This document shows, one piece after another, positions 10,111-59,989 of a DNA stretch of 64,000 bases. This DNA comes from Hypanus sabinus (taxonomy: Eukaryota). The number at the start of each line of letters is the position of its first letter. The stretch's first letter is position 1. A model generated the notes under the pieces. The model had not been told where the DNA came from. It was given only the letters and a program-made list of their open reading frames with translations, and made no database searches. Where the stretch lies: NCBI RefSeq assembly GCF_030144855.1, contig NC_082709.1:149110001-149174000 (forward strand). The letters run 5' to 3'. Made by a program: the position numbers and the translations under genes.

Positions 10111-10117
10111 ACACATA

Positions 10118-36630: not shown

Positions 36631-36723
36631 CAACAAAACTGAACGCAATCAGTACCAGCAATAATAAACTAATTCCCACGATGATGATGACAGCATGTGA
36701 GATAAATGGGATGAGGTGGTCAT
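36631..36723 (-). CDS. Putative transmembrane exon of copy B (DDHLIPFISHAVIIIVGISLLLLVLIAFSFV)
   Basis: tttgcag acceptor, GTAAGT donor, 93 nt, phase 1-1 and in frame with C1-e; uninterrupted hydrophobic run. Linkage across the ~14-kb repeat-filled intron is inferred. Confidence 0.72.
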
Positions 36724-38039
36724 CTGCAAATGGAGTATACAGATCATCATCATTTAAGAACCTTAATGCAAACTGAAATTCTTGCTGAATTTTCAAAAAT
36801 TCTGGCCATTTTACAAATCAAATAACTGAGAGACAAAAGACTTGGCGTAGGTGGCTTCTTTGTTTTCTGCGGTTTTGTTTTCAAGGGATCTAAGCATCTT
36901 AAAATAAATTGGATTGTCACTGACCTACTTTTGCATGTGTATGACAATCACATGTTTTTGCCCTTTATCTGCATTTCTTCTAGGGTTAACTCTAACCTTA
37001 AAAAGCACAGATAGGAAATGTGAGTTTTTTTAAAAAGTAAAAAATGATATAAAAACCAGATGTTGAAATTAAATTAATCAGTTTGTCTGATGCAAATTAT
37101 ATTTTGTTTATTAATGAAATGTGCTAAATGTGGTTCAGTGTAATTCATGCAGCACAGTATGAAACAAGTATTGTAAATGTCATAATATCTGAATGTTCTA
37201 GAATTTGATAGCGTCTGTCAATAGTAAATGAAAAGTAAAACATTCCAGATTTTGAACATTTCAAATTCTGAAAATATTTGTCATTTGGAGAAGGAACATT
37301 TCAGATTAAATATTAATGATGTAATTGAATTTCCTTAGTGTATACTTATTCTAAGTAAATCTAAAGGAATAACTTGTGGATTCAGAAGTCCAAAATATAT
37401 TCAGTACTTTTTAAAAAAGGAAATGATCATTCTAACCAATTAGCATCAATTCATTCCATATCATTATTAGCTGCTCTCATGGGGGAGGGAATTAACAGTG
37501 GCTAGAGATCATGTGAAATCAAATGTGCTTTCAAAAGTCTAGCAATGATTTGATGTCCTTCCGTGACCAAGTTTCTGTAAATATCTCCATGGTGCATCCT
37601 TCGTTACTCGGTGCCCGTGCAGACCCTGATTTATAACTGCACCCATATATTCACTTTAATTGTGCAATTTAGATTTTCCACTACACATCTGTTTCATCTC
37701 AAACTATTGCAGTTACTTGACCACAAGTAAACTGTGTGGTAACTTACATTTTTCCACAAGTTAAATTCTGGTTTTAATTGTTTTAACTAAATATTATGCC
37801 TCACTATATTCCAAATATACACTGATAAGATTATAATAACACTCTAGGAGAGTGACAATATTTATGATAAATTATGTTTGATTAAATACAATTTAAAAAC
37901 CCCAGGATTAATCTTGCTGGACTCACAGTTATTTTCCTTTATAGTATAATAGCATATATATTCAGCTGAAGTCTGCTGTGCAGATGGTTTAAAGAACAGT
38001 GATATTAGGAAAATAAATTCAAGCATACATTAATTTTCC

Positions 38040-39600
38040 AATGGTAAATTCCCTCCATGCACCTATCAAATTTCTCTTAAATTCACAATTTCTGCTGGCA
38101 GTTCATTCTGCACTCTCACCACCCTCTAGGTGAAGAAATTCCCCCTCATGTTCCCTTTCAACAATTCTCCTTTCATCTTAACCCATGACCTCTAGTTCCG
38201 GTCTCACCCATTCTCAGTGGAAAAAGCCTGCTCGCATCTATTGCTCAGAATTTTGTATACCTCCATCAAATCTCCTCTCATTCTTCTGTGCACTGTGGAC
38301 TAAAATCCTAACCTATTCAACCTTTCCCTATAACTCAGGTTCTCGGGTCCTAGTACTATTGTTGCAAATTTTCTCTGCACTCTTTCAATCTTATTGACTT
38401 GGTTCCTGTAGGCAGGTGGCCAGAAATGCACACGGTACTCCAAATTAGGCCTGACCAACGTCATATACAACTTCGACATAACACTGCCAACTCTGGTACT
38501 CAATACCGGACTATGAAGGCCTATGTGCCAAAACCTTTCTTAATGGCTCTATCTGTGATGCCACTTTCTCAGAATTATGGATCTATATTCCCCAGTCCCT
38601 CTGTTCTACCACACTCCTCAGTAAACCCAAGCCAGGTTTGTCCTACCAAAATGCACCTCCTCACACTGCCAGTTTTCAGCCAGTTTTTGTCATCTGGTCC
38701 AGTTCCTATTCCAAGCTTTGATAGTCTTCCTCACTGTCGGCTACACCCCCAATTTTGCTGTCATCACAAATTTGCTTATTGCTTATGTACAAGACCCAGA
38801 ACATATTCTCTGAAATGGATAACACTGAGGAATTTAAAGCTGCTGACACTCTCCACCTCTGATCTTCCAATGAGGACTGTCTTATGGACCTCCAGTTTCA
38901 CCCACCTGTAGTCAATAATCAGCTCTTTGGCCTTATGACATGCAGTGAGTGGTTCCTGTTGTAGCACCACACAATCAGGAATCTCATTCTTATCCACAGA
39001 AGCATCTGTCTGTTCCCCAAACCAATGACACCACTATCATTACAGCTCACCTCTTTTCCTCCCTTCCCTTCTCAGCCACAGTGCCAAAGACCTGACTGAC
39101 CATAAGAGCAGAATTGAGCCATCACGTTTGCCCCACTAGTTCATCATGGCTGATCCATTTCTCCTCTTGGCCCCAATCTCCTCCCTTCTCTCCATTTCCT
39201 CTCCTGCCCCAACCAATCAAGAATCTATCAACCTCTGCTTTAAAATGTACAAAATGACTTGGCCTCCACAGCTGCCTGTGACAACAACTTCCATAGATTT
39301 ACCACTCTCTGGTAAAGAAATTCCCCTTCATCTCCATTATGAAAGCCTCTATTCCGAGGCTGTGGTCTCTGGTCCTGGACTCTCCTACCATTAAAATCAT
39401 CTTCTCCACATCCACTCTATCAAGACCTTTCAACACTCGATATGTTTCAATGAGGTCACCTCTCATTCTTCTTAATTCCAGTGAATACAGGCCCAAAGCC
39501 ATCAAACACTTTTCATATGACAAGCCATTCAATCCTGGAATCATTTTCCTATGAAGAACTCCTATGAACCCACCTCAGTGTCAGTACATCCTTTCTAAGA
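38040..39600 (-). mobile_element. Stacked CR1 and Rex1 fragments
   Basis: RT C-terminal ORF pieces at 38300, 38776 and 39299. Confidence 0.75.
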
Positions 39601-39619
39601 GAGGTTGTTTAAGAGATAA

Positions 39620-42600
39620 CAGATCCATTGGTCATGATCTTTCAAGAATCAACTGATTCTGGATGGTTCCAGAAGAGTGCAAATGTTATTCCACTCTTTA
39701 AGAAGGCAAAGGAAAGGAAATTATTTGAGCATGTAGTTATTAAGAAAGAGGATGTGCTGGAGCTTTTGGAAAGCATCAGGTGGGATAAGTCACTGGGACT
39801 GGACAAGATGTATCCCAGTCAACTGTGGGAAGCATGGGAGGAATTTGCTGAGCCTCTGGCAATGATCTTTGCATCACCAATGTGGATGGGAGAGGTTCCA
39901 GAAGATTGGAGGGTTGAGGATGTTGTTCTGTTATTCAAGAAAGTGGGTAGATCTAGCCCAGGAAATTATAGATCAATGAGTCTTACATCAGTGGTTGGTA
40001 AGTTGATGGAGAAGATCCTGAGAGGCACGATTTATGAACATTTGGAAAGGCATAATATGATTAGGAATAGTCAGCATGGCTTTGTCAAAGGCAGTCATGC
40101 CTTGTGAGCCTGATTGAATTTTTTGAGGATGTGACTAAATGCATTGATGAAGGTAGAGCAGTAGAAGTAGTGTATATGGATTTCAGCAAACATTTGAGAA
40201 AGTATCCCATGAAAGGCTTATTGGGAAAGTAAGGAGGCATGGGATCCCAGGGGATATTATTTTGTGTGTAACCCCCAGGTTGCCTCAGGCTCGCTCAGCT
40301 TGTTCTCGTCTAGGGGGAGCAGCCTTCGACCCCACCAAACTGGGTAATCAGCTGGTGTGGATGCTGTGTGATGTCCCCGCCTTGCCCAAAAACAGACAGT
40401 TCACCATATGCGATTAAATTAGTACAATTTATAAAGGTTACTATAACTAAGTGATTAATAACGATACAGTATATATGAAGGGGAAAAAAATAAAGAAAAG
40501 GCGCCAAACTTATCAAAGTCCAAACCACTTCGTGCACAACCATTGGAGCTCAATTACTGAAGTCTTCTGGCCACTATTCAATCCCCTCTGAACCCCTCGA
40601 CTCGCTGCTCAGGACCACCCGAAGTGGTCAACCAAGCACATCTATCTTTGTCTCCTCTCCTCGGGGTACCTCCTAGCCTCGGACACCCACCTTGGGGTCC
40701 GTTCCACGCCCAGTTTACAGCGTCGCGTCCTCTCTCTCTCACCCCCTCACGCCGATCTTCCCAAAAGCCCGCCAACAATAGCTTACAGACTCAGAAGAAA
40801 GAACAACATTAATCCCAATTGGTTAACAAAGGAATACAATTCTCGTTAACGGTAAATTTTAACCCAAACAAGCTTCCAGCACTCTCTCGTAACAAAGAAG
40901 CATTCCTACTTTTAACAAAACAAAGAAGCCATTTTGATTACATACACAGTAACAAAGAAAAAGAAGAAATCCACTTTACACTCTCCCCCCACCAAATAAA
41001 AGTCATGTCCTGATAACTATTAAATAACTCGCCACCTTTCCTGCCAACACAACCTAACCCAAGCACAAACAGTGACATCTCCTCCCCACACAGTAAACCT
41101 CACGCCCTGTTCCTCAGGAGCTACCTAGGCCAACTATCTGGGAGTTCCCTAACCCTTCTGAGACCTCCGTACCCCCTCACCTAAACCCTTCAGGCTCGGA
41201 CACAACTGGGGATACCTTGGGCCCACTACCAACTCCTCTCTCAACCTCTCACTCATGCCCCACACTGCACACAGCTAACCCTCCCCGCTACACCTGACTC
41301 AATGGGAGAAGGGCCAAAGGTCTCTTCCTCAATCGAGGGAAAGTCAGCAAAAGGCAGCATGTACCACACATCCAGCACATTATCCATCGAATCTGTATTC
41401 TTCCTCATTTCTGCGATTGGTAGCTGCTGTTTGATCTTCTCCAAATGGAAACACGTGGCCTGCATTGCTCCTGCAGTCTCTTCAGCCTCCTGTTCAGTAT
41501 TCACGGCACTTCTCTCCAACTTTTTCTTCCTCATGACTTCTTCCAGATCAACTTTCTCCAGTCTCTTCATCTTCATTTCAAACTTGATTCTGTAGAGACA
41601 GTCACTCATGAGCTGCAACCTTCGCCAGCCCTGGCACGTGTCCAGAAAACACTTTAACTCTGTAGTTCTCAGCCACTCCTGCAACGACCTCACTTCATAT
41701 TCTCCTGAGGCAAATCCAAATACCAAGATATCATCCACATACACCAAAACGCCTCCATATCCCCTATGGTCTTCCACCTGCCCCGCAGGAAGGTTGCAAG
41801 GGCTCCGGATATGCCCTGTGGCATCTTTTCGGACTGGAAGACTCCTAGGGAATTTATAACGGCCATCTTCTCCTTGTCGGCCCCACTCATCGGGATCTGG
41901 CAACATCCACTCCTCAGATCCAGCACCTTAAACCACGTCGCACCACTCAGACAGGCCATCGCCTCTCTGGCCCTCAGGGCCATATTCTGGTCACTGACAG
42001 TGCGCCTCTTCAACGCAATATAATCCATACACACGCTGCCTACATCTTCCACGGCTGTAGGGGCCAGTCGCCGCAACCTCTCTCTCTCTCTCCGAGGTGT
42101 CTTCAGCGGTCAACTTCCCTCCCTCGTGGTATTTCGCAGTGTCCACTAAGAGGGTCTCATCCTCAGATACTTTCCCCAGGCCGTACCACCACCGGCTCTT
42201 GTTTGAATTCGGTATCGGCCCAATGCTGCTACACATGTCCGCACAAGCTGCTCGAAACCCTGGGTGCATCGACAATGCCTCCAAACAGCGCTCACCCGCC
42301 TCCTCTGGGCAGGCCCCCAAGCGCACCAGCAGGATATTGGTTCTCTCCAGAACCGAAATGCTGCCCATCTCAACAGTGTCCGGACACATCAGCATTAACG
42401 ATTCACGAACCTCAGTCACCTCCACATTTGCCTCTAAGAACTCCATTTTCACTGACCAACAACCGTCATCTGGATAATCACCGACACCGGCACCCCAAAT
42501 CTCCAGTGCCCTCAATGTCGTCAAGGGTAAATGCTTCCAATAACGGTTAGAAAACAAACTGTAAAGCAAATTAACCGGCGCCCCGGTGCCGAAGATGGCT

Positions 42601-45160
42601 TTAACTTGACTTCCATCCATCCGTAACAACACCTGTGCGCTTGGTCCCTCTAAGCCTTCAGGAATAGGGTCTGTTACTTTCGGGAGTTCCTTGGTACATT
42701 GCTGGGAACGTGCTCCCCCAGAGACCCCAAGCCATTCCCCCACAGGGCCTCCTCTAAGTTTCCCGACACCTCTCGGATCAACGGAACAACTGATCCCCTT
42801 GACAGATCCCCTTGGCACTGCAAGCAATTTATCTGCCCCCCTAGACAAAAGGGATACCCTAAAAACTTCCCACAAATCTCCTGCCACGGATATGATAAGC
42901 CCCCCAGCTGCGGCATTTGACTTCCAGTCGAACCACACACATTTTCCCACACTTTCACATAACTGACAGCTGTCACCCCGAGGTAATTGTACCCAACAGT
43001 TCTAACAATGCCACCAGCCCGCCTACTCAAACTTCCAACCAATTCCTGTCGCTTTCCCTCAGCCAAGCACTGCCACTCACCCAACAACTGAGAGGTCTGC
43101 TCCACCCACGCCTCCGCCCCTTTAGGGCTGGACATTATTCCAACAACCGGGCGGAGCTCACCACTGCTGAAACATCCCAACCTGTCACTCCTCAATCTCC
43201 AAACAGTACGGACAACCCATGGTCCCACCACCATTTCGTCAGCGTTAGTCGGAACTTGAACAACGCCCCCTGGGGCACCAACAGCCACCCCACCCAACAC
43301 ACATACAGAGATAACCAGCAATCGCACACCCACAAAGGCACACCAGCTCTTTGCCACAGACATAATTTAAATAGGGTGATCACACAGCTTCCACGGAAAT
43401 CAACCCCGGATGAGCACCCCACAATGTAACCCCCTGGGTCACCTCAGGCTCGCTCAGCTCGTTCTCGTCTAGGGGAAGCAGCCTTTGGCCCCGCCAAACT
43501 GGGTAATCAGCTGGTGTGGATGCTGTGTGATGTCCCCGCCTCGCCCAAAAACAGACAGCACACCATATGCGATTAAATGAGTACAATTTATAAAGGTTAC
43601 TATAACTAAGTGATTAATAACGATACAGTATATATGAAGAGAAAATTAAAGAAAAGGCGCCAAACTTATCAAAGTCCAAACCACTTCGTGCACAACCGTT
43701 GGGAGCTCAATTACTGAAGTCTTCTGGCCACTATTTGATCCCCTCTGAACCCCTCGACTCGCTGCTCAGGACCACCCGAAGTGGAAAACCAAGCACATCT
43801 ATCTTCGTCTCCTCTCCTCCTGGCCTCGGAACCCCCCCCCCCCCCCCTTGGGGTCCGTTCCTCGCCCAGCTTACAGCATCGCGCCCTCTCTCTCTCACCC
43901 CCTTGCGCCAATCTCCCCAAAAGCCTGCCAACAATAGCTTACAGACTCAGAAGAAAGAACAACATTAATCCCAATTGGTTTACAAAGGAATACAATTCTC
44001 GTTATCAGTAAATTTTAACCCAAACAAGCTTCCAGCACTCTCTCGTAACAAAGAAGCATTCCTACTTTTAACAAAACAAAGAAGCCATTTTGATTACATA
44101 CACAGTAACAAAGAAAAAGAAGAAATCCACTTTACATGTGGACCCAGAACTGGCTTGCTCACAGAAGGCAAAGAGTGTTTGTAGACGGGTCATATTCTGC
44201 ATGGAGGTCGGTGACCAGTGGTGTGCCTCTGATCTGTTCTGGAACCTTTACTCTTCATGACTTTTATAAATGACCTGGATGAGGAAGTGGAGGGATGGGT
44301 TAGTAAGTTTGCTGATGACACAAAGGTTGGAGGTGTTATGGATAGTGTGGAGGGCTGACCAGAGTTTACAGTGGGACATTGATAGGATACAAAACTGGGC
44401 TGAGAAGTGGCAGATGGAGTTCAACCCAGCTAAGTGTGAGGTGGGTCAAATATGATGGCAGAATATAGTATTAATGGTAAGACTCTTGGCAGTGTGGAGC
44501 ATCAGAGGGATCTTGGGGTCTGAGTCCATAGGATGCTCAAAGCTGCTAAATAGGTTGACTTTGTGGTTAAGAAAGCATATGGAGCATTGGCCTTCATCAA
44601 TTGTCGGATTGAGTTTAGGAGCCAAGAGGTAATGTTGCAGCTATATAGGACCCTGGTCAGATCCCATTTGGAGTACTGTGATATTTCTGGTCGCCTCACT
44701 ATAGGAAGGATTTGGAAACCATAGAAAGGGGGCACAGGAGGTTTTCAAGGATGTTGCCTGGACTGGGGAGCATGCCTTGTGAGAATAGGCTGAATAAACT
44801 TGGCCATATTTCCCTGGAGTGGCGGAGGATGAGAGGTGATCTGATAGAGGTGTATAAGATGATGAGAGGTATTGAATGTGTGGATAATCAGAGGCTTTTT
44901 CCAGGGCTGAAATGGCTAGCATGAGAAGGCATAGTTTTAAGGTGCTTGGAAATAGGTACAGAGGTGATGTCAGTGGTAAGTTTTTTTTTAAACGCAGAGA
45001 GTGGTGAGTGTGTGGAATGAGCTGCCAGCGAAGTGGTGGTGGCAAATACAACAGAGTCTTTTAAGAGACTCCTGGATAGGTACATGGAGCTCAGAAAAAT
45101 AGAGGGCTCTGGGCAAACCTAAGTAATTTCTAAGTTAGGGACCTGTTTGGCACAGCTTTG
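39620..45160 (+). mobile_element. CR1 RT fragment split by the Gypsy insertion (39620-40266 and 44137-45160)
   Basis: RT sequence reads through across the TGTG target duplication. Confidence 0.85.
40267..44136 (-). mobile_element. Gypsy/Ty3 LTR retrotransposon, degenerate and without integrase
   Basis: LTRs 40267-40980 and 43425-44136 with TGTAA...TTACA ends; TGTG target duplication; tRNA-Pro-like PBS at ~43405-43421; PPT at 40981-40993; PNMA-like gag, protease and RT (YVDDILVFG) remnants. Confidence 0.93.
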
Positions 45161-47743
45161 TGGGCCAAAGGGCCTGTATTGTGCTGCAGATTTTCAATGT
45201 TTGTGTTTGCTCCTTTTCAGTCTTCTGGAACCATACCAGAAACTAGTCATTCCTAGAAGATCATTACTAATGCCTCCACAGTTTCTCCTGCCTCCTTTTT
45301 TAGAGCCCTGGGCTGTATACCATCTGGTCCAGGTGACTTATTTAATTTCAGACCTTTCAGTTTCCCAAGAACCTTCTCCTTAAAAATGGAAAATCAACAC
45401 ACTTCTAGCCCCTGACACTCTGGAACCCACTATACTGCTGGTGTCTTCCATAGTGAAGACAGATGCAAAATACTTCATCTGCCATTTACTTGTCCCCCAT
45501 TACTATCTCAACAGCATCATTTTCCAGTGGTCCAATATCTATTCAAACCTGTCTTTTACACTTCATGTATCTCAAGAAACTTTTCTTTAATATTATTGGC
45601 CAGCTTATTTTCGTATTCCATTTTTTTCCTTCTTAGTGATGTTTGTAGTTGCCTTCTGTTGGTTTTTAAAAGCTTCCCAATCCTCTAATTTTTGCTCTAT
45701 TACATCCCCTGTCTTTGGCGTTTATGCTGGCTTTAACTTGTTTGCCATGCTTGTGTCATCTTGCCTTTTGAATGGGTCTTCCTCTTTGGGATGTATTTAT
45801 CTTGTGCCTGCTGAATTGCTTAGAGAAATTCCAGACATTGCTGCCATGTCATCATCCCAGCCAGTGTTCTTTTCTAATCAATTCTGTCCAACTCCTCTCA
45901 GGCCTCTGTAATTCCCTTTACTCCACTCTAATATGGATCATCTGACCTTAATTTCCCTTCTCAAATTCAGGGTGAAATTAGTCATATTATGATCACTTGC
46001 CACTAAAGGTTCTTTTACCTTCAGCTCTCTAATCAATTCTGGTTCACTGCCCAACACCCAATCCAGAATAGCTGATCCCCTAGTGGCCTCAACCATTAGC
46101 TGAGCAGCTCTAAAAAGAACAGCTTTTAGGCACTCTGGAAATTCCCACTCCTGGAATCTACTCCTGTTGTAATTGGCAGACTGCATTCTTATTACCATTT
46201 GTTAATAACTCCCATCAGGGTCTTTTCACCCGTGCAGTGGTTTAGCTCTATGCACAATGATTTGACACCTTTTGTCCATGCATCATCTCTTTCTAATGAT
46301 TTAAGTTTTTACCAATGGAGCTTTCAACCATGATTTTGTCATGCCTACGTCATACCTGCCAATCTGTAACTGTGTTACAAGTGCACCTGTTGCAATGAGT
46401 GACTGAGGAAATGAACCGAGGTGCAGGACGCAGACGGAGATTGAGTTTGGATGCTTACATGGGTATGAATACTGAACAGCAAATAGGAGAGATCTTGACA
46501 TGGAGCCCTGATATGTAACCTCGACATGGAGCCTTGACTCAGAGACTTGACACAGTGCCCTGACTCAGAGAAATGGCGTCTCATAGGAAACCCTTGAAAC
46601 TGGAGCTAGGCTTAGAACAAATGGTTCTAAGCAGTCGGGAAATGTAGTTAACTCACAGTTAAAAAAAACAACGAATTGGTAACTAGTGGTTGTGACGCTG
46701 GAGTTCTTGTACTGCAGTTCTTGATGGAAACCAGGTGTGCCATCATCAAAGCGAATGAGAAGCAATTGGGAAATTAATGGTCAGAACTGTGACACAATCA
46801 AAGGAAATTAGGAGCAGGATAGAAAAATAATGATCAGGGCAGTGACAGCACCTACCTACCTTATTCCGTTTACTACATTCATTAAAATATAACAATTTCA
46901 GCACTGTATTCACCCTTTTCAATGTTCTCCCCTTTTACACTGCAACTCATCCTGTTGACTGCAGATTTGCCCTGTCAACAGCCCTTCCTTTCTAGGAGTC
47001 TCATTGCAAATTGCTTTTGTTTGTAAGCCAACTCCCTCATCCTCAGGACTAGCACCTCTGTTCCCATCATGCTACCAAATTAGTTTAAACCTTCCCAAAC
47101 AAATCAACTGTTCTCAGACTTCCAGCCGGGTATTGATTATAATTAACGTTTCGATGTCAATCTCTGCCATCTTCTTCAGAGATAATGCCTGGGCATGTCT
47201 TGTCCAGGGGTATTTAAACCCCCGTTGTCCGTTCCTCCGGTTTGGTAAATGTTCATCAAATCAGGGTTCAGCTCCCCCACCTTGTTAACAATTGAATTCC
47301 AGTTCATCCGTTAGAGGAGGAGCTTTGTTACACACAGTGATAGCACTAGATCCATTTACAAACCTGCCTGTGAGGATGTCGGAGCCTCTCGGGCACAGTT
47401 TGTACCTTGATCCCAATGATCCATCAATCTGAACCCCTGTCCCCCACACCAGTTCCTCAGCCACGCCTTCGCCTGCCAAGTCATCCCATTTTTACACTCA
47501 CTGTTGCTTTCTATCCTCTGCCCGGTCATCCATGCCAACTGTGTCTTAAGTTCAAAGTATGTATACTTTATACAAGCTTAAAAATTGTTTCCTTACAGGC
47601 AGAGAACCCCAACAGAACCCGTTAGAAACAAAATAAGACCATCAAACACCTTGTGTGCAGGGAGAGAGAAAAATAATGCAGAATATAAAAGGCAAGGGAA
47701 CACCACTGAGAACTGAAGTTTACAAAGCCAGGCATCATAGAAT

Positions 47744-50140: not shown

Positions 50141-50924
50141 TCTAGCTCCGATCATTGCAGGCGATCCAGCAGACCACTAAACTGCAGGCCACAGCCTCAG
50201 GTCAACGCAGATACGAGCAAACCCCGCGGAGTATTGAGCCGGGGTGACCCGCCCTCGCTTCCGACCCCGACACCCAGACTATTTCAATCTGGCCCGACGC
50301 TTAAATCGTATAAATCGCTGGTCGTTCCTCACTCTCTGCCACTTCGATACGCTCTTCGGCTCCATTCAGTCGGTGCACGACCTTCCCAATTCAGTTCGGC
50401 TCTTAAATCATTCGAGCCTCGGATCCTTCCTCCACTTCGCCCTGCCTTGGTTCTGCCGCATGGAATTGCCTCCAAGCCAGCTCCAGCAACTCCGAGTCCG
50501 GACTTGCTACAACCGTCCTGCCGCCTTTCGTTGCTTTATGAGTGGACAATTGTTTATTACTTGTCAATATTTTTCATATAGTTGGCCTTCCATTTTCTAA
50601 TAAAAATGACCTTGTCTTCGTCCGATAATCTACCTAACTGGAACCCCGCGCTCTTGTAATTATTCTATTCAACCCGTCTGTATCTTCTGCCTATTTTACG
50701 ATAACATACAGCTCCAGTTTCTTTATATCAATTCCGTATATTGAAATAAATGATTCTGCAATAAAAGTCTGTAGATACTGAGGGCGTTACCCGAATTTTT
50801 GCTCTTCAGCTTAACGAATGGCATTCACCCCAAGGTTTGTATAAATTTACAAAATGTACTTCCAATTTCACCCGTGATTCGGAGGAGCAAGTTGTGGGAT
50901 TTATTCCCGTTGTAAACCACTTAC

Positions 50925-51218
50925 CTCGGTTGAAAGTCAAACTTTTCCTCACACTCCCTGTAACGTGGTGAACCAGGCAGGTGGCGACGGGAACTGACCC
51001 CCGCCGACAGTCGGTCACCCGCAGCCGGGAGCTCAGGTTGTAGGTATGGTCCTCGTTTACCCTCAGCGGATCCGCCTCTGTTTCATACAAGACATTTCCC
51101 GTTACAGTCCAAGAAATATTCAGATCTTCCGGGAAAAATCCCGCAGCCATACAAATCAGGGTCTGAACCCCAGCGGCTTCGTTCTTGGGATCCAGAACGA
51201 GGGAGACGTCAGGCTTCG
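50925..51218 (-). CDS. Copy B C1-e (membrane-proximal) exon
   Basis: Open 294-nt exon, GTAAGT donor, extra Cys in VTDCRRG; no V exon between it and C1-d. Confidence 0.9.
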
Positions 51219-52336
51219 CTGCAGATAACGGGAGAATTAACACATGGTGAATGTTGCTGTAACCCAGATGGATACAGACAGCAACAGTGGACACAACTGA
51301 AGACGGTGCACGATACAAAGTAACACTCTAATCCAAGTTGATTATTATCTGTCTCAAAATTCACACTGGTAGGAAGAGAAACAAAATAGAGCACGGGAAA
51401 GGAATGAATTCGAAATGTGACATTTCACGGTTCTGATTCCACATTACCAATCCCTTTGGTGTTTACCGTACTTCATGTCGGCGTTGAAAAGCGGTCTGAG
51501 GTTCGCGTTTTAACCGCCTCTCTTCCGACGAACTTTTGGGAATTTGTATGAACAATCCTGCTGCCCCTGGACGTGGTGGCGCTGATGAATTCAGCGACAG
51601 GTCTTCTCTTCCCCATGCGGGAGATTGTTTCGGTGTTGGTTAATCTGATTACTTTGGGTCAGAAGCAAAACACAAACCAAACGCGGCAAAGTTGATGATG
51701 TTCCCTCAATAGAGCTACTGAACTTCGCTCCGTTGAGAACAAAATTAGAAAGGGCTTGATAATCGGTGCACAATAGTATCTGTATGAAGGAAACCGGTTA
51801 CCTTTACGGACTTGTGGGCATTTTAGTTAGGAGTCTCAACGTTATATTTAAAAAGTCTTGAAGTCGAAGCTTTAACTCCAAAGCCCCCCTAACAACGTGT
51901 CTATTCCGTGTTCGCGAACCGTGGGCTTTGTTCCTTTTGTAAACCACCAACCTCGGCTAAAATTGAGAGGTTTATGTAGAAAGTTAGCGAGGGTGGGTGC
52001 TTCTAATCCAGAATCCGAGGGTACTCACAGGTGTTTGTTTCTGTCTAGTTAGTACTTATTACCAATTCCATTCATAAATCTTCACAAGTAGCATAATTAT
52101 TTGAAATATGCACGATAACATACTGCGCAAGTTTTCTATCAATTCAATAAATTGAAATAAATGATCTGGCAATAAGAGACTGTAGATATTGAGGGCGTTA
52201 CACGATTTTTTTACTCTTCAGATTAACGAATTGCTTTCGACCTATTATTTGTATTAATTTACAAATTTTATCTCCAATTTTCACCAGTAATTGGGAGAAG
52301 CAGGTTGTGGGATTTATTCCTGTGTGAAACACCTAC

Positions 52337-52630
52337 CTCGGTTGAAAGTGAAACTTTTCCTCACACTCCCTGTAACGTGGTGAACCAGGCAGGTGGCGAC
52401 AGGAACTGACTCCCGCCGAGCGTCGGTCACCCGCAGCCGGGAGCTCAGGTTGTAGGTATGGTCCTCGTTTACCCTCAGCAGATCCGCCTCTGTTTCATAC
52501 GAGACATTTCCCGTTACGATCCAAGAAATACTCAGATCTTTCGGGAAAAATCCCGCAGCCACACAAATCAGGGTCTGAACCTCAGCGGCTTCGTTCTTGG
52601 GATCCAGTGAGAGGGAGACGTCAGGCTTCG
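52337..52630 (-). CDS. Copy B C1-d exon
   Basis: Open 294-nt exon with intact splice sites. Confidence 0.9.
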
Positions 52631-53222
52631 CTGCAGATAACGGGAGAATTAACACATGGTGAATGTTACTGTAACCCAGATGGATACAGACAGCATAAGT
52701 GGACACAACTGAAGACAATTGATTATTTGGTGTCTCAAAATGCACGCCAGCAGGAAGAGACAAAATACAGCCGGGAAGCGGAATGACTTCGACATGACGC
52801 AGCGCGTGATAAACTAATATTGAAAATAGTAACAATTGGAAATATCCATCAGGTCAGGTCGCAACTTTGGGAAGAGAAACAGTGGTAAAGTTCTGACGAA
52901 GGGTTTTCAATGCCAAGTGTTTGTTGCTCATCAGCGGATGGGCCCGATTGTTTCCTTCATTTCCTGGTTTTATTTTTCCGCTTCTTTCATTTGACCACAA
53001 GTTGGTCAGTTAGCTCCAATTCCACTGATAGTGTCCGAACGTTTCACGGTTCAGAAGCAAAGGATTCCTCCAGCAGGTCAGGGCGCGTTTGGAGAAAGGG
53101 ATCTAAAGACCCGTTATCCAGCTCGGCCATTGGTCTGAGGCATTGACCCCAGTTCCCTCGCTTCACACTTTGCCCGGCCTGCTGAGTATTTCCAGCGTTT
53201 ACTGCTTTCATTTCACACGTAC

Positions 53223-53555
53223 CTCGGATGGTCACTTCTGTTCCGCTTCCAAAATACGTTTTCCAGTGGTTCGAATCCATTCTCAGCGCTGAGCATTGGT
53301 AAGTGTCAGAGTCATCCACAGTCACGTCGCGAATGACCAGTCGGCCTTCAGACCTAGACAGAGAGATCCGAGCGCCATTTTTTAGGAAATTACTGGATCC
53401 GCTTTCAGGTTTGTCTAGTGTCCGCGTCCAAAAATACCTCGCCGAATCCACCCGCTCGTCCGCGGATAACAGGGAACAGTAGATCCGAGCTGTCTGTCCT
53501 CGGAGAAGGGTCAGAGCCGAAGGTGTCTGGTTCACTTTCGGAGCAACAGCGGGAG
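53223..53555 (-). CDS. Copy B V4: VJ exon
   Basis: Open 333-nt exon with intact splice sites. Confidence 0.9.
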
Positions 53556-54428
53556 CTAGAACAGAAAATCACCGCAATTAGCAACAAGATCCAAAATTAT
53601 GAGAGGACAACGAGAATAAATGCCAAACGGAGAGAGCGCGTGAATTACCCGGGAGAAACAGCCAGACCGAGTACAATAACTTCCAGGTTGTGTGAAGGAA
53701 GCGCCGAGACACGGATTTATTCTGTGTAAACTATTAAACGTGTTCGCTATTGATTCTATTCTCAGGTTTATTTCAAATGCAAGTTGATGTTGTTCCCTCA
53801 ATAGAGCTACTGAACTTCGCTCCGTTGAAAACAAAATTAGAAAGGGCGTGATAATCGGTGCACAATAGTATCTGTATGAAGGAAACCGGTTACCTTTACG
53901 GACTTGTGGGCATTTTAGTTAGGAGTCTCAAAGTTATATTTAAAAAGTCTTGAAGTCGAAGCTTTAACTCCAAAGCCCCCCTAACAACGTGTCTATTCCG
54001 TGTTCGCGAACCGTGGGCTTTGTTCCTTTTGTAAACCACCAACCTTGGCTAAAATTGAGAGGTTTATGTAGAAAGTTAGCGAGGGTGGGTGCTTCTAATC
54101 CAGAATCCGAGGGTACTCACAGGTGTTTGTTTCTGTCTAGTTAGTACTTATTACCAATTCCATTCATAAATCTTCACAAGTAGCATAATTATTTGAAATA
54201 TGCACGATAACATACTGCGCAAGTTTTCTATTAATTCAATAAATTGAAATAAATGATCTGGCAATAAGAGACTGTAGATATTGAGGACGTTACACGATTT
54301 TTTTACTCTTCAGATTAACGAATTGCTTTCGACCTATTATTTGTATTAATTTACAAATTTTATCTCCAATTTTCACCAGTAATTGGGATGAGCAGGTTGT
54401 GGGATTTATTCCTGTGTGAAACACCTAC

Positions 54429-54722
54429 CTCGGTTGAAAGTGAAACTTTTCGTCACACTTCCTGTAACGTGGTGAACCAGGCAGGTGATGTCGGGTACTG
54501 ACCCCTGCCGAGAGTCGGTCACCCGCAGCCGGGAGCTCAGGTTGTAGGTATGGTCCTCGTTTACCCTCAGCGGATCCGCCTCTGTTTCATACGAGACATT
54601 TCCCGTTACGGTCCAAGAAATACTCAGATCTTTCGGGAAAAATCCCGCAGCCACACAAATCAGGGTCTGAACCTCAGCGGCTTCGTTCTTGGGATCCAGT
54701 GAGAGGGAGACGTCAGGCTTCG
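54429..54722 (-). CDS. Copy B C1-c exon
   Basis: Open 294-nt exon with a variant C-terminal half (DSRQGSVPDITC). Confidence 0.9.
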
Positions 54723-55320
54723 CTGCAGATAACGGGAGAATTAACACATGGTGAATGTTACTGTAACCCACATGGACACAGACAGCAACAGTGGACACAA
54801 CTGAAGACAATTGATTATTTGGTGTCTCAAAATGCACGCCAGCAGGAAGAGACAAAATACAGCCGGGAAGCGGAATAACTTCGACATGACGCAGCGCGTG
54901 ATAAACTAATATTGAAAATAGTAACAATTGGAAATATCCATCAGATCAGGTCGCAACTTTGGGAAGAGAAACAGTGGTAAAGTTCTGACGAAGGGTTTTC
55001 AATACCTAGTGTTTGTTGCTCATCAGCGGATGGGCCCCGATTGTTTCCTTCATTTCCTGGTTTTATTTTTCCGCTTCTTTCATTTGACCACAAGTTGTCA
55101 GTTAGCTCCAATTCCACTGATAGTGTCCGAACAAGGACGTTTCACGGTTCAGAAGCAAAGGATTCCTTCAGCAGGTCAGGGCGCGTTTGGAGAAAGGGAT
55201 CTAAAGACCCGTTATCCAGCTCGGCCATTGGTCTGAGGCATTGGCCCCAGTTCCCTCGCTTCACACTTTGCCCGGCCTGCTGAGTATTTCCAGCGTTTAC
55301 TGCTTTCATTTCATACGTAC

Positions 55321-55653
55321 CTCGGATGGTCACTTCTGTTCCGCTTCCAAAATATGTTTTCCAGTGGTTCGAATCCATTCTCAGCGCTGAGCATTGGTAA
55401 GTGTCAGAGTCATCCACAGTCACCTCTCGAATGACCAGCCGGCCTTCAGACCTAGACAGAGAGATCCGAGCGCCATTTTTTAGGAAATTACTGGATCCGC
55501 TTTCAGGTTTGTCTAGTGTCCGCGTCCAAAAATACCTCGCCGAATCCACCTGCTCGTCCCCGGATAACAGGGAACAGTAGATCCGAGCTGTCTGTCCTCG
55601 GAGAAGGGTCAGAGCCGAAGGTGTCTGGTTCACTTTCGGAGCAACAACGGGCG
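55321..55653 (-). CDS. Copy B V3: VJ exon
   Basis: Open 333-nt exon; translation identical to V2. Confidence 0.9.
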
Positions 55654-56525
55654 CTAGAACAGAAAATCACCGCAATTAGCAACAAGATCCAAAATTATGA
55701 GAGGACAACGAGAATAAATGCCAGACGGAGATAGCGCGTGAATTACCCGGGAGAAACAGCCAGACCGAGTACAGTAACTTCCAGGTTGTGTGAAGGAAGC
55801 GCCGAGACACGGATTTATTCTGTGTAACCTATTAAACGTGTTCGCTATTGATTCTATTCTCAGGTTTATTTCAAATGCAAGTTGATGTTGTTCCCTCAAT
55901 AGAGCTACTGAACTTCGCTCCGTTGAAACCAAAATTAGAAAGGGCGTGATATATCGGTGCACAATAGTATCTGTATGAAGGAAACCGGTTACCTTTACGG
56001 ACTTGTGGGCATTTTAGTTAGGAGTCTCAACGTTATATTTAAAAAGTCTTGAAGTCGAAGCTTTAACTCCAAAGCCCCCCTAACAACGTGTCTATTCCGT
56101 GTTCGCGAACCGTGGGGTTTGTTCCTTTTGTAAACCACCAACCTCGGCTAAAATTGAGAGGTTTATGTAGAAAGTTAGCGAGGGTGGGTGCTTCTAATCC
56201 AGAATCCGAGGGTACTCACAGGTGTTTGTTTCTGTCTAGTTAGTACTTATTACCAATTCCATTCATAAATCTTCACAAGTAGCATAATTATTTGAAATAT
56301 GCACGATAACATACTGCGCGTTTTCTATCAATTCAATAAATTGAAATAAATGATTTTGCTATAAGAGACTGTAGACACTGAGAGCGTTACACGATTCTTT
56401 TACTCTTCAGATTAACGAATTGCTTTCGATCTATTATTTGTATTAATTTACAAATTTTATCTCCAATTTTCACCAGTAATTGGGAGAAGCAGGTTGTGGG
56501 ATTTATTCCTGTGTGAAACACCTAC

Positions 56526-56819
56526 CTCGGTTGAAAGTGAAACTTTTCCTCACACTCCCTGTAACGTGGTGAACCAGGCAGGTGGCGACAGGAACTGACT
56601 CCCGCCGAGCGTCGGTCACCCGCAGCCGGGAGCTCAGGTTGTAGGTATGGTCCTCGTTTACCCTCAGCAGATCCGCCTCTGTTTCATACGAGACATTTCC
56701 CGTTACGATCCAAGAAATATTCAGATCTTTCGGGAAAAATCCCGCAGCCACACAAATCAGGCTCTGAACCCCAGCGGCTTCGTTTTTGGGATCCAGAGAA
56801 AGGGAGACGTCAGGCTTCG
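56526..56819 (-). CDS. Copy B C1-b exon
   Basis: Open 294-nt exon with intact splice sites; protein identical to C1-a. Confidence 0.9.
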
Positions 56820-57417
56820 CTGCAGATAACGGGAGAATTAACACATGGTGAATGTTACTGTAACCCACATGGACACAGACAGCAACAGTGGACACAACTG
56901 AAGACAATTGATTATTTGGTGTCTCAAAATGCACGCCAGCAGGAAGAGACAAAATACAGCCGGGAAGCGGAATAACTTCGACATGACGCAGCGCGTGATA
57001 AACTAATATTGAAAATAGTAACAATTGGAAATATCCATCAGATCAGGTCGCAACTTTGGGAAGAGAAACAGTGGTAAAGTTCTGACGAAGGGTTTTCAAT
57101 ACCTAGTGTTTGTTGCTCATCAGCGGATGGGCCCCGATTGTTTCCTTCATTTCCTGGTTTTATTTTTCCGCTTCTTTCATTTGACCACAAGTTGTCAGTT
57201 AGCTCCAATTCCACTGATAGTGTCCGAACAAGGACGTTTCACGGTTCAGAAGCAAAGGATTCCTTCAGCAGGTCAGGGCGCGTTTGGAGAAAGGGATCTA
57301 AAGACCCGTTATCCAGCTCGGCCATTGGTCTGAGGCATTGGCCCCAGTTCCCTCGCTTCACACTTTGCCCGGCCTGCTGAGTATTTCCAGCGTTTACTGC
57401 TTTCATTTCATACGTAC

Positions 57418-57750
57418 CTCGGATGGTCACTTCTGTTCCGCTTCCAAAATATGTTTTCCAGTGGTTCGAATCCATTCTCAGCGCTGAGCATTGGTAAGTG
57501 TCAGAGTCATCCACAGTCACCTCTCGAATGACCAGCCGGCCTTCAGACCTAGACAGAGAGATCCGAGCGCCATTTTTTAGGAAATTACTGGATCCGCTTT
57601 CAGGTTTGTCTAGTGTCCGCGTCCAAAAATACCTCGCCGAATCCACCTGCTCGTCCCCGGATAACAGGGAACAGTAGATCCGAGCTGTCTGTCCTCGGAG
57701 AAGGGTCAGAGCCGAAGGTGTCTGGTTCACTTTCGGAGCAACAACGGGCG
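57418..57750 (-). CDS. Copy B V2: VJ exon
   Basis: Open 333-nt exon with intact AG/GT sites, 2097 bp from V1. Confidence 0.9.
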
Positions 57751-58622
57751 CTAGAACAGAAAATCACCGCAATTAGCAACAAGATCCAAAATTATGAGAG
57801 GACAACGAGAATAAATGCCAAACGGAGATAGCGCGTGAATTACCCGGGAGAAACAGCCAGACCGAGTACAGTAACTTCCAGGTTGTGTGAAGGAAGCGCC
57901 GAGACACGGATTTATTCTGTGTAACCTATTAAACGTGTTCGCTATTGATTCTATTCTCAGGTTTATTTCAAATGCAAGTTGATGTTGTTCCCTCAATAGA
58001 GCTACTGAACTTCGCTCCGTTGAAACCAAAATTAGAAAGGGCGTGATATATCGGTGCACAATAGTATCTGTATGAAGGAAACCGGTTACCTTTACGGACT
58101 TGTGGGCATTTTAGTTAGGAGTCTCAACGTTATATTTAAAAAGTCTTGAAGTCGAAGCTTTAACTCCAAAGCCCCCCTAACAACGTGTCTATTCCGTGTT
58201 CGCGAACCGTGGGGTTTGTTCCTTTTGTAAACCACCAACCTCGGCTAAAATTGAGAGGTTTATGTAGAAAGTTAGCGAGGGTGGGTGCTTCTAATCCAGA
58301 ATCCGAGGGTACTCACAGGTGTTTGTTTCTGTCTAGTTAGTACTTATTACCAATTCCATTCATAAATCTTCACAAGTAGCATAATTATTTGAAATATGCA
58401 CGATAACATACTGCGCGTTTTCTATCAATTCAATAAATTGAAATAAATGATTTTGCTATAAGAGACTGTAGACACTGAGAGCGTTACACGATTCTTTTAC
58501 TCTTCAGATTAACGAATTGCTTTCGATCTATTATTTGTATTAATTTACAAATTTTATCTCCAATTTTCACCAGTAATTGGGAGAAGCAGGTTGTGGGATT
58601 TATTCCTGTGTGAAACACCTAC

Positions 58623-58916
58623 CTCGGTTGAAAGTGAAACTTTTCCTCACACTCCCTGTAACGTGGTGAACCAGGCAGGTGGCGACAGGAACTGACTCCC
58701 GCCGAGCGTCGGTCACCCGCAGCCGGGAGCTCAGGTTGTAGGTATGGTCCTCGTTTACCCTCAGCAGATCCGCCTCTGTTTCATACGAGACATTTCCCGT
58801 TACGATCCAAGAAATATTCAGATCTTTCGGGAAAAATCCCGCAGCCACACAAATCAGGCTCTGAACCCCAGCGGCTTCGTTTTTGGGATCCAGAGAAAGG
58901 GAGACGTCAGGCTTCG
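58623..58916 (-). CDS. Copy B C1-a: Ig C1-set exon
   Basis: 294 nt, ttatctgcag acceptor and GTAGGT donor, phase 1-1. Contains LICVAAGFFPKDLNISW, NEDHTYNLSSRL and TCLVHH. Confidence 0.92.
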
Positions 58917-59514
58917 CTGCAGATAACGGGAGAATTAACACATGGTGAATGTTACTGTAACCCACATGGATACAGACAGCAAAAGTGGACACAACTGAAG
59001 ACAATTGATTATTTGGTGTCTCAAAATGCACGCCAGCAGGAAGAGACAAAATACAGCCGGGAAGCGGAATGACTTCGACATGACGCAGCGCGTGATAAAC
59101 TAATATTGAAAATAGTAACAATTGGAAATATCCATCAGGTCAGGTCGCAACTTTGGGAAGAGAAACAGTGGTAAAGTTCTGACGAAGGGTTTTCAATGCC
59201 AAGTGTTTGTTGCTCATCAGCGGATGGGCCCGATTGTTTCCTTCATTTTCTGGTTTTATTTTTCCGCTTCTTTCATTTGACCACAAGTTGGTCAGTTAGC
59301 TCCAATTCCACTGATAGTGTCCGAACAAGGACGTTTCACGGTTCAGAAGCAAAGGATTCCTCCAGCAGGTCAGGGTGCGTTTGGAGAAAGGGACCTAAAG
59401 ACCCGTTATCCAGCTCGGCCATTGGTCTGAGGCATTGACCCCAGTTCCCTCGCTTCACACTTTGCCCGGCCTGCTGAGTATTTCCAGCGTTTACTGCTTT
59501 CATTTCACACGTAC

Positions 59515-59847
59515 CTCGGATGGTCACTTCTGTTCCGCTTCCAAAATATGTTTTCCAGGGGTTCAAATCCATTCTCAGCGCTGAGCAATGGTAAGTGTCA
59601 GAGTCATCCACAGTCACGTCGCGAATGACCAGTCGGCCTTCAGACCTAGACAGAGAGATCCGAGCGCCATTTTTTAGGAAATTACTGGATCCGCTTTCAG
59701 GTTTGTCTAGTGCCCGCGTCCAAAAATACCTCGCCGAATCCACCCGCTCGTCCCCGGATAACAGGGAACAGTAGATCCGAGCTGTCTGTCCTCGGAGAAG
59801 GGTCAGAGCTGAAGGTGTCTGGTTCACTTTCGGAGCAACAGCGGGAG
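59515..59847 (-). CDS. Copy B V1: germline-joined VJ-type Ig V-set exon
   Basis: 333 nt, ttttctgttctag acceptor and GTACGT donor, phase 1-1. Contains IYC, YFW, DSDTYHC and the J motif FGSGTEVTIR in one exon. Confidence 0.92.
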
Positions 59848-59940
59848 CTAGAACAGAAAATCACCGCAATTAGCAACAAGATCCAAAATTATGAGAGGAC
59901 AACGAGAATAAATGCCAAACGGAGAGAGCGCGCGAATTAC

Positions 59941-59989
59941 CCGGGAGAAACAGCCAGACCGAGTACAATAAGCTTCCGAGTAGTGACAT
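59941..59989 (-). CDS. IgSF receptor copy B, leader (signal peptide) exon, MSLLGSLLYSVWLFLP
   Basis: ATG at 59989-59987, 49-nt hydrophobic exon, phase-1 donor GTAATT, 93-nt intron to the V exon; typical Ig leader layout. Confidence 0.85.

What the first reader, a model, noticed from the sequence alone, without database searches (positions are those of the whole stretch)
36631..59989. Non-rearranging receptor with a tandem array of antigen-receptor-like VJ-C1 modules: L-(VJ-C1)x4-C1-TM
Seen: one leader, four germline-joined VJ exons, five C1 exons and one TM exon, all open, all with canonical splice sites and all phase 1, giving ~981 codons plus a tail. Established: VJ-type V (FGxGT) paired with C1 is the Ig/TCR unit, and non-rearranging VJ-C1 proteins exist (SIRPs are V-C1-C1; PRARP-type genes). 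The junction EVTIR|AKP resembles SIRP ELSVR|AKP. Inference: a string of light-chain-like modules in one membrane protein is an architecture I do not recognise from a named family, and it could give multivalent binding.
Basis: partly seen in the sequence, partly recalled or inferred. Interest (0 to 1): 0.9.

Follow-up and report, generated by a model that had tools for sequence, protein, structure and literature searches.

The report
SIRP-like gene with repeated V-C1 modules
A stingray gene of the SIRP immune-receptor family carries a recent four-fold tandem copy of its binding-domain and constant-domain exons, all still readable and spliceable, so it may encode an unusually long receptor with four binding heads, but no transcript has been seen yet.

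Summary
All have AG/GT sites and all junctions are phase 1. Joined, they give an open 995-codon frame.

The family can be named. It is an elasmobranch SIRP-like family, known only from automatic annotation. Shark members are V-C1-TM with four tyrosine motifs spaced as in SIRPalpha. Stingray members next to TTF2 have a different TM and a short tail, like SIRPbeta.

The four modules are a 2.1-kb tandem unit, 93-100% alike. The unit carries a leader remnant whose ATG was lost by an 11-nt deletion. Hemitrygon akajei has the same deletion, but its second V is a dead exon. A 99% paralogous copy in this window has one V and one C1.

So this is a young, lineage-specific exon-pair amplification in a locus that often gains and loses such exons. 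By default splicing it would give L-(VJ-C1)x4-C1-TM. Expression is untested. I found no annotated protein of this family with more than one V, but the search for products over 842 aa was uninformative.

Earlier notes of this scan on this same window raised several of these points.

Verdict: real structure, new variant of a known kind.

The parts
59941..59989 (-). Leader exon of copy B (ATG, 16 codons + 1 nt, donor gtaatt)
   Evidence: It is identical to the leader of Hypanus sabinus XP_059824346 (P0154).
59515..59847 (-). VJ exon V4 (module 1), 333 nt, phase 1-1
   Evidence: Pfam V-set; G strand FGSGTEVTIR lies in the same exon.
58623..58916 (-). C1 exon C1d (module 1), 294 nt
   Evidence: Pfam C1-set.
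57418..57750 (-). VJ exon V3 (module 2)
   Evidence: Identical in nucleotides to V2.
56526..56819 (-). C1 exon C1c (module 2)
   Evidence: Identical in nucleotides to C1d.
55321..55653 (-). VJ exon V2 (module 3)
54429..54722 (-). C1 exon C1b (module 3), the most divergent of the array (89% aa identity to C1c)
53223..53555 (-). VJ exon V1 (module 4)
52337..52630 (-). C1 exon C1a (module 4)
50925..51218 (-). Fifth C1 exon (C1e), outside the 2.1-kb array. It is the C1 that followed the type-2 V in the inferred ancestral arrangement.
36631..36723 (-). TM exon (DDHLIPFISHAVIIIVGISLLLLVLIAFSFV), phase 1-1
   Evidence: It matches the TM of annotated P0001 and P0002.
28195..28238 (-). Tail exon ([14 protein letters not shown], then stop). 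It lies antisense to the last coding exon of TTF2.
   Evidence: It is used in the annotated models of H. akajei and Mobula hypostoma.
51689..59977 (-). Tandem array of about 3.95 units of 2092-2099 nt. Each unit holds a leader remnant, a V exon, a C1 exon and a spacer.
57844..57879 (-). Leader remnant of an internal unit: an 11-nt deletion removed the ATG, and no in-frame ATG lies upstream. The same remnant ends at 55747 and 53649 in the next two units.
6736..8358 (-). Paralogous copy A, with only one module: leader 8358-8310, type-2 VJ exon 8216-7884, C1 exon 7029-6736. Its TM exon lies off the window.

Best explanation
Copy B is a short-tailed, SIRPbeta-like member of an elasmobranch SIRP-like family of non-rearranging VJ-C1 receptors. 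It lies tail-to-tail with TTF2.

A 2.1-kb segment holding the 3' part of the leader, the V exon, the C1 exon and a spacer was amplified to four tandem copies. The mechanism was unequal crossing-over, followed by patchy gene conversion.

The internal units have no start codon and no promoter region, so they cannot be genes of their own. They can only be read as internal exons of the one transcript that starts at 59989. All exons are symmetric phase-1 cassettes with the same splice signals as the exons used in annotated orthologues. Default ordered splicing would therefore give a 995-aa type I membrane protein: signal peptide, four near-identical VJ-C1 modules joined by the short linker NR-APVVAPK, a fifth C1, a TM helix with His near its outer end (Arg in the orthologues), and a 14-residue tail.

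Inferred function: it binds the same ligand class as its long-tailed inhibitory paralogues, as paired receptors do, but with up to four heads and a longer reach. It would signal through an adaptor or act as a decoy.

Shown here: the gene anatomy, the family, the origin by tandem duplication, and the lack of independent starts. Inferred: that the transcript joins all exons, and what the protein does.
For: - Open 995-codon frame with canonical AG/GT sites and phase 1 at every junction.
- Pfam V-set and C1-set on the exons.
- The AlphaFold model of orthologue P0001 (mean pLDDT 82.6) folds as V plus C1 plus a TM helix. It matches two-domain Fab and TCR chains in the PDB.
- Family members: P0001, P0002, P0004, P0006, P0007, P0154, P0196-P0204 from 12 elasmobranch species.
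- The best PDB sequence hit of P0154 is SIRPalpha 2wng, E 3e-22, collinear over V-C1-C1 including GTE.. VRAKP.
- Shark members carry four tyrosine motifs at the same spacing as chicken, mouse, possum and crocodile SIRPalpha.
- TM and tail exons match the annotated H. akajei and Mobula models, and both loci abut a TTF2-like gene.
- Array and mosaic structure.
- Internal leader remnants lack the ATG and have stop codons upstream.
- The same C1-spacer-leader remnant-V junction, with the same 11-nt deletion, is present in H. akajei. The internal-V arrangement therefore predates the split of the two species.
- Among the units, exons have 0 indels and 0 stop codons, against 5-6 indel events in the introns. 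P(0) is about 0.06-0.10.
- Exon sites vary more than intron sites: 31/635 against 40/1365, Fisher p 0.037.
- C1-to-C1 splicing (FNR|AKPDVS) is used in the annotated Hypanus and Mobula birostris V-C1-C1 products.
- Precedent: UrIg2 has nearly identical tandem pairs of C exons, and the full-length transcript was recovered (PMC12227049).
Against: - There is no transcript evidence of any kind.
- No protein encoded by this window, and none of this family with more than one V, turned up among 150 representatives or in the word-index searches up to 842 aa. The search meant to reach 1000 aa was swamped by amniote SIRPs and is uninformative.
- The units differ by only 0-7%, so intact frames are weak evidence of selection. 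dN/dS among units is about 0.3-1 on very few changes.
- Relatives show that extra V or C1 exons at this locus usually die. In H. akajei the second V lost its acceptor and has an 8-nt frameshift, and that locus has no fifth C1. Mobula has a V fragment with stops between V and C1. Every unit's spacer holds the relic of a C1 3' end.
- The 99% twin copy A has a single module.
- An AATAAA sits about 20 nt after each C1 donor and could end transcripts early.
- Copy B sits in a segmental duplicate next to what looks like a truncated TTF2, so its expression cannot be assumed.
Confidence: 0.45

Rival explanations
1. The array is real but young and functionally neutral. Either copy B is a silent or weakly expressed duplicate, or the extra V-C1 cassettes are mostly skipped in splicing. 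The protein actually made would then be the ordinary L-VJ-C1(-C1)-TM form, and the extra exons are on their way to decay.
For: - Units are 93-100% identical and dN/dS is not clearly below 1.
- Extra V and C1 exons have decayed in H. akajei, in Mobula, in the spacer relic and in the upstream pseudogene.
- Twin copy A and all annotated orthologues have one V.
- All cassettes are phase 1, so skipping any of them keeps the frame.
Against: - The internal exons have exactly the same splice signals as the exons that are used, and their introns are short, 0.6-1.1 kb. Ordered inclusion is therefore the default expectation.
- There are no indels or stops in 2.2 kb of extra exon, while the introns of the same units carry 5-6 indels.
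- Exons vary more than introns. Simple neutral decay of dead exons does not predict that.
Confidence: 0.33
2. The unit count is an assembly artefact. The true locus would have fewer units, or copies A and B would be two haplotypes of one locus placed in tandem.
For: - The period is near-perfect at 2097 nt, and two stretches of about 1 kb are 100% identical between neighbouring units.
- Copies A and B are 98.5-99.2% identical in their flanks.
Against: - Every unit differs from every other somewhere, in a mosaic pattern.
- There are no gaps.
- The 8.4-kb array is shorter than a typical long read (general knowledge).
- A and B are separated by unique sequence holding the TM exon and TTF2 exons.
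- A carries a different V type, which H. akajei also has as its second V.
Confidence: 0.08
3. The locus mainly makes a secreted one-module protein. Transcripts would end at the AATAAA just after the first C1 donor. The frame then reads through as ...FNRGRCFTQE-stop, a light-chain-like tail with a free Cys, and the downstream units are never transcribed.
For: - AATAAA lies about 20 nt after every C1 donor. In the four array units the in-frame stop lies inside that hexamer.
- The C1 end KSFTFNRG..C recalls the kappa light-chain end (my memory of that sequence).
- Light chains are among the best PDB hits of the C1 exon.
Against: - The read-through stop is not conserved. H. akajei has one extra G that shifts the frame, and C1e and C1A read on for 38 codons.
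- Mobula has AGTAAA instead of AATAAA.
- The C1 donor is a good consensus site and is used in all annotated orthologues to reach the TM exon.
- A strong 5' splice site next to a poly(A) signal usually suppresses it (general knowledge).
Confidence: 0.1
4. The four units are four separate tandem genes, like a minicluster of germline-joined light-chain-like genes.
For: Each unit holds a leader-like piece, a V exon and a C1 exon, the same parts as a cartilaginous-fish Ig minicluster.
Against: - The three internal leader pieces lack the ATG. They have stop codons and no Met upstream in frame.
- Homology to the true 5' flank ends about 25 nt before the ATG position, so no promoter region was copied.
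Confidence: 0.02

Closest known systems
SIRP family (SIRPalpha / SHPS-1, SIRPbeta, SIRPgamma)
   Same: - N-terminal V domain with a J-like G strand, fused in the germline and joined to C1-set domains through ...VR|AKP.
- SIRPalpha is the best PDB sequence match of the Hypanus paralogue, collinear over V-C1-C1.
- Long-tailed members carry four tyrosine motifs at SIRPalpha spacing.
- The family also has short-tailed members with a basic residue at the outer end of the TM (Arg in P0001 and P0002), like SIRPbeta.
- The paired paralogues have 84-93% identical V domains.
   Different: - Mammalian SIRPs are V-C1-C1. Sharks have V-C1. This gene has (V-C1)x4-C1.
- The V is about 10 residues shorter between the conserved Trp and the second Cys than SIRPalpha V. 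That is my count. This shortness resembles VNAR, which with TCR Valpha is the best PDB match of the V exon.
- The window gene has His, not Arg or Lys, in the TM.
- The locus neighbours TTF2, which in human is at 1p13 while the SIRP cluster is at 20p13 (my memory).
- No ligand is known.
UrIg2 (elasmobranch non-rearranging VJ plus 9-11 C1 plus TM; PMC12227049)
   Same: - Non-rearranging single-exon VJ followed by C1 domains and a TM.
- Nearly identical tandem duplications of a pair of adjacent Ig exons, homogenised by gene conversion. Exon number differs between species, and the full-length transcript was recovered.
- The C1 exon here hits the UrIg2 structure 9dmx at E 1.4e-14.
   Different: - UrIg2 has one V; only C exons are repeated.
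- Here the repeated pair includes the V, so the binding domain itself is reiterated.
- The families differ: SIRPalpha scores above UrIg2 for the whole ectodomain.
UrIg (VJ plus 3 C1, secreted, MHC-linked)
   Same: A non-rearranging VJ-C1 gene of elasmobranchs.
   Different: It is secreted only, made in liver, has one V and three distinct C domains, and is linked to the MHC.
Two-V antigen-receptor chains (NAR-TCR delta: V-V-C)
   Same: More than one V domain in one antigen-receptor-like chain.
   Different: - Those V domains rearrange, are stacked directly with no C1 between them, and differ in type.
- Here the units are germline-joined, identical in type and alternate with C1.
Axolotl model XP_069483859 (P0024), V-C1-V-C1-TM, in a different VJ-C1 family
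   Same: An automatic gene model with two nearly identical V-C1 modules joined directly and followed by one TM. It suggests that V-C1 pair duplication recurs in non-rearranging VJ-C1 receptors.
   Different: - It belongs to another family, with an IPPP...GxGTxL..A.PRV type V.
- It has two modules, not four.
- It is uncharacterised and may itself be unverified.

Membership tests
SIRP family | N-terminal V-set domain with a germline-fused J-like G strand, joined directly to a C1-set domain | tested here: met
   Pfam V-set and C1-set. FGSGTEVTIR|AKPDVS lies across one exon junction. It aligns to GAGTELSVRAKPS of SIRPalpha 2wng.
SIRP family | Ectodomain order V-C1-C1 | tested here: not met
   Met by the paralogues P0154 (Hypanus) and P0196 (Mobula birostris). 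The window's copy B is (V-C1)x4-C1, copy A is V-C1, and shark members are V-C1.
SIRP family | Closest solved relative by sequence is a SIRP | tested here: met
   P0154 against the PDB: SIRPalpha 2wng is first, E 3e-22, one collinear stretch 23-311. For single exons the picture is mixed. The C1 exon hits a light chain, SIRPalpha and UrIg2 at E 2e-15 to 1.4e-14. The V exon hits TCR Valpha and VNAR.
SIRP family | Long-tailed members carry four cytoplasmic tyrosine (ITIM-type) motifs | tested here: met
   In the last 125 residues, P0006 and P0198 have motifs at offsets 48-51, 76-79, 95-98 and 117. Mouse and possum SIRPalpha have them at 47-49, 71-73, 88-90 and 114; crocodile has four at the same offsets and chicken three matching the last three. 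This holds for the family, not for the window's own genes. The window has no such exons.
SIRP family | Short-tailed (beta-type) members have a basic TM residue for an adaptor such as DAP12 | tested here: inconclusive
   P0001 and P0002 have Arg (FISRTV, FILRAV). The window gene has His (FISHAV). The adaptor is unknown.
SIRP family | Binds CD47 or another defined ligand through the V domain | not testable with these tools
   No binding data are available.
SIRP family | Phylogenetic placement of V and C1 with SIRPs rather than with IgL, TCR, UrIg or PRARP | not tested
   No tree was built, because I held no named IgL, TCR or PRARP sequences. The nearest non-elasmobranch hits are auto-named SIRPalpha/beta-like.
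UrIg / UrIg2 | One VJ followed by three or more C1 domains; no repeated V | tested here: not met
   Four V exons alternate with C1 exons. Compare the description in PMC12227049.
Rearranging Ig / TCR | V and J are separate germline segments that must be joined by recombination | tested here: not met
   V and J motifs lie uninterrupted within each single 333-nt exon.
PRARP (Fu et al. 2019, cited in PMC10751288) | Sequence membership in the PRARP VJ-C1-TM family | not tested

The most novel reading that the evidence does not exclude
Copy B is expressed as one 995-residue SIRPbeta-like membrane protein that strings four germline VJ-C1 modules, each resembling the V-C unit of an antigen-receptor chain, in a single chain. 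This would be the first natural receptor in which the VJ-C1 unit itself, and not only C domains, is reiterated. The symmetric phase-1 cassettes could also let splicing set the number of heads.
Probability: 0.4. Interest if true: 0.65.

Novelty: new variant of a known kind. Interest (0 to 1): 0.5.

Why it matters
If the mRNA really joins all cassettes, it would show that the VJ-C1 unit of antigen receptors can be multiplied in series in one chain. Natural Ig, TCR, SIRP and UrIg proteins are not known to have that layout. It would also give a natural test of what valency and reach do for a paired innate receptor.

The locus is also a clear, datable example of how unequal crossing-over builds and destroys Ig-exon arrays. 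One inferred ancestral arrangement explains three states. In copy B the module was amplified. In copy A it was lost. In H. akajei the second V decayed.

A by-product may matter more widely. Sharks and rays have SIRPalpha-like genes with the four-tyrosine tail. A 2026 survey dates the SIRP family to tetrapods (PMC13262535).

Tried and rejected
- Tandem Repeats Finder found nothing, because its longest period is 500 nt. The repeat finder and self-BLAST found the 2.1-kb array.
- A literature search for PRARP returned only unrelated acronyms. A search for signal-regulatory protein plus elasmobranch returned nothing.
- P0004 and P0005 could not be placed on contigs.
- The last word-index search used an alignment headed by a 608-aa skink SIRP model, to widen the length window to about 1060 aa. 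It returned only amniote SIRPs and none of the stingray proteins. It therefore says nothing about a 995-aa product.
- The Foldseek search of the P0001 model gave only generic Fab and TCR two-domain chains, with poor superposition because of the elbow angle. It does not discriminate between families.
- I looked for inhibitory-type TM and tail exons in the window and found none.
- The reading as four separate genes is rejected.
- A conserved secreted form is considered unlikely.
- I did not identify the species. It is a dasyatid-like stingray, 93-94% identical in DNA to the H. akajei orthologous locus. It is 92-97% identical to a paralogous Hypanus sabinus locus.
Full report
**What is there**

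The gene lies on the minus strand. ORF listing and direct reading show four nearly identical V-type open exons and five C1-type open exons between 50.9 and 59.9 kb.

I fixed the boundaries from the splice signals and joined the exons in a script:
- leader 59989-59941;
- V exons 59847-59515, 57750-57418, 55653-55321 and 53555-53223 (333 nt each);
- C1 exons 58916-58623, 56819-56526, 54722-54429, 52630-52337 and 51218-50925 (294 nt each);
- TM exon 36723-36631;
- tail exon 28238-28195.

Every acceptor is AG, every donor is GT and every junction is phase 1. The joined frame is 2988 nt, 995 codons plus a stop, with no internal stop. Pfam gives V-set for the V exons and C1-set for the C1 exons. Each V exon contains its own J-like G strand (YFGSGTEVTIR), so nothing needs rearranging. 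That exon is 91% identical to the TM of an annotated orthologue.

**The repeat**

The four V-C1 pairs sit in a head-to-tail array of about 3.95 units of 2092-2099 nt (51689-59977). Copies are 93-100% identical.

An alignment of the units shows a mosaic. Units 1 and 2 are identical over the C1 half and differ in the V half. Units 2 and 3 are identical over the V half and differ in the C1 half. Unit 4 differs again. This is the footprint of unequal crossing-over and gene conversion among real copies. The window has no N.

Each internal unit begins with a remnant of the leader exon. An 11-nt deletion has removed its ATG. Upstream in frame there are stop codons and no Met. Homology to the true 5' flank stops about 25 nt before the ATG position. 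The internal units therefore cannot be genes of their own.

**A twin copy and the origin of the array**

Window 1-7235 matches 44203-51422 at 99.2%, and 7715-12370 matches 59345-64000 at 98.5%. This copy A has one leader, one V and one C1. Its V is a second type. It differs from the array V mainly in the stretch TRDKPVNGSSNFLKNNSWICLSGKEGW, against TLDKPESGSSNFLKNGARISLSRSEGR in the array.

The orthologous locus of Hemitrygon akajei (L001) is collinear with the window. It reads leader, type-1 V, C1, spacer, leader remnant with the same 11-nt deletion, then a type-2 V. That second V has lost its acceptor AG and carries an 8-nt deletion. No fifth C1 follows it.

The simplest history is an ancestral arrangement L-V1-C1-spacer-L'-V2-C1e-TM. 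Copy B would have amplified the V1-C1 unit and lost V2, with a junction at about 51689. Copy A would have lost V1-C1 by recombination between L and L'. H. akajei would have let V2 decay. This history is inference.

Other relics fit a locus in constant turnover:
- the 3' end of a C1 exon with its donor sits in every spacer;
- Mobula hypostoma has a V fragment with stops between V and C1;
- a decayed V and C1 lie upstream of copy A.

**What family it is**

A word-index search with the V exon found 270-aa proteins of H. akajei and Mobula hypostoma (90% and 85% identical). They have the order leader-VJ-C1-TM-14-residue tail. Both lie tail-to-tail with a gene carrying GRF zinc-ribbon, SNF2 and helicase C domains, which is TTF2-like. 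In the window the TTF2 end...[13 protein letters not shown], is at 28068-28232 on the plus strand. It overlaps the receptor's tail exon in antisense.

An exhaustive representative search and a second word search added members from 12 elasmobranch species. Automatic annotation names them SIRPbeta-1-like, SIRPalpha-like (PTPNS1-like), kappa-like or TCR-beta-like. Shark members are V-C1-TM with a long tail. Hypanus sabinus and Mobula birostris have V-C1-C1-TM with a long tail.

The best solved relative of the Hypanus protein is SIRPalpha, at E 3e-22 and collinear over all three domains. The long tails carry four tyrosine motifs, of the LHYASV, TEYAVL, VQYSAV and TIYASL kind. Their spacing is the same as in chicken, mouse, possum and crocodile SIRPalpha.

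The window's genes have the other TM and the short tail, and the window holds no inhibitory-type exons. I therefore read the family as elasmobranch SIRPs, and the window's genes as their short-tailed, beta-like members.

I found no paper on this family in the library. One 2026 survey dates SIRPs to tetrapods.

**Will the four modules be in one protein?**

In favour:
- The internal exons have the same splice signals as the exons used in annotated orthologues.
- The introns are 0.6-1.1 kb and all phases match, so ordered inclusion is the default.
- C1-to-C1 splicing is already used in the Hypanus and Mobula birostris models.
- The extra exons show no indel or stop, while the unit introns carry 5-6 indel events. 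P(0) is about 0.06-0.10.
- Exon sites vary more than intron sites: 31/635 against 40/1365, p 0.037.
- UrIg2 shows that near-identical tandem exon pairs can all be included in a real transcript.

Against:
- I have no transcript.
- No multi-V protein of this family turned up, and the one search that could have reached 1000 aa was uninformative.
- dN/dS among units is 0.3-1 on few changes.
- Relatives let such extra exons die.
- An AATAAA follows each C1 donor. Neither it nor the read-through stop is conserved, however.

I put the multi-module protein at about 0.4-0.45, the "young, skipped or silent" reading at about 0.33, a mainly secreted one-module product at about 0.1 and an assembly artefact at under 0.1.

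**How it would work (inferred)**

The model of the orthologue folds as V plus C1 plus a TM helix. It resembles two-domain Fab and TCR chains.

In the four-module protein, each C1 would be tied to the next V by NR-APVVAPK. In module 1 this stretch is the end of the split leader. The V domains are 94-100% identical and differ at a few loop positions. The gain would therefore be valency and reach, not new specificity.

The TM has His where the orthologues have Arg, and the tail has no motif. Signalling would need an adaptor, or the protein is a decoy for the ligand of the inhibitory paralogues.

**Comparison and verdict**

The unit is SIRP-like. The mechanism of growth is the one described for UrIg2. 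What is new is that the repeated pair includes the V domain.

An axolotl model of another VJ-C1 family shows the same idea with two modules.

This is a real structure and a new variant of a known kind. Its interest is moderate until a transcript is shown.

Noticed in passing
window 1-12370 versus 44203-64000: A segmental duplication, 98.5-99.2% identical and 44.2 kb apart. Copy A has one type-2 V and one C1, where copy B has four type-1 V and five C1. C1A looks chimeric: its 5' half resembles C1a and its 3' half and flanks resemble C1e.
   Followed up: yes
   Followed up: partly
window 20037-20150 and 28068-28232, plus strand: Exons from the 3' part of TTF2: a helicase C motif exon and the last coding exon, ...[13 protein letters not shown]. 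The receptor's tail exon overlaps the last one in antisense. There is little room for the rest of TTF2 (about 1190 aa in relatives) between 17 and 20 kb. This copy may be a truncated duplicate.
   Followed up: partly
window 51927-51958, 54019-54050, 56118-56149, 58215-58246, minus strand: Each unit's spacer holds a relic of the last bases of a C1 exon with its donor and downstream sequence. It is also present in H. akajei, so it is a trace of an older round of duplication and deletion.
   Followed up: partly
window, about 20 nt after each C1 donor (for example 58596-58601): An AATAAA follows every C1 exon. In the four array units the read-through frame stops inside it (FNRGRCFTQE-stop). H. akajei keeps the hexamer but not the frame, and Mobula has AGTAAA.
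   Followed up: partly
P0006, P0197-P0204, P0154, P0196 (sharks and rays); L003: Elasmobranchs have SIRPalpha-like genes. Sharks have V-C1 and some rays V-C1-C1. Their cytoplasmic tail has four tyrosine motifs at the same spacing as amniote SIRPalpha. A 2026 survey (PMC13262535) dates the SIRP family to tetrapods.
   Followed up: partly
window 39300-43400 and 47900-49500 (also 3700-5300): Reverse-transcriptase and LINE-like ORF fragments fill much of the 14-kb intron between C1e and the TM exon.
   Followed up: no
P0024 (axolotl XP_069483859): An automatic model of another VJ-C1 family with two nearly identical V-C1 modules joined directly before one TM. Duplication of the V-C1 pair may recur in vertebrates.
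   Followed up: partly
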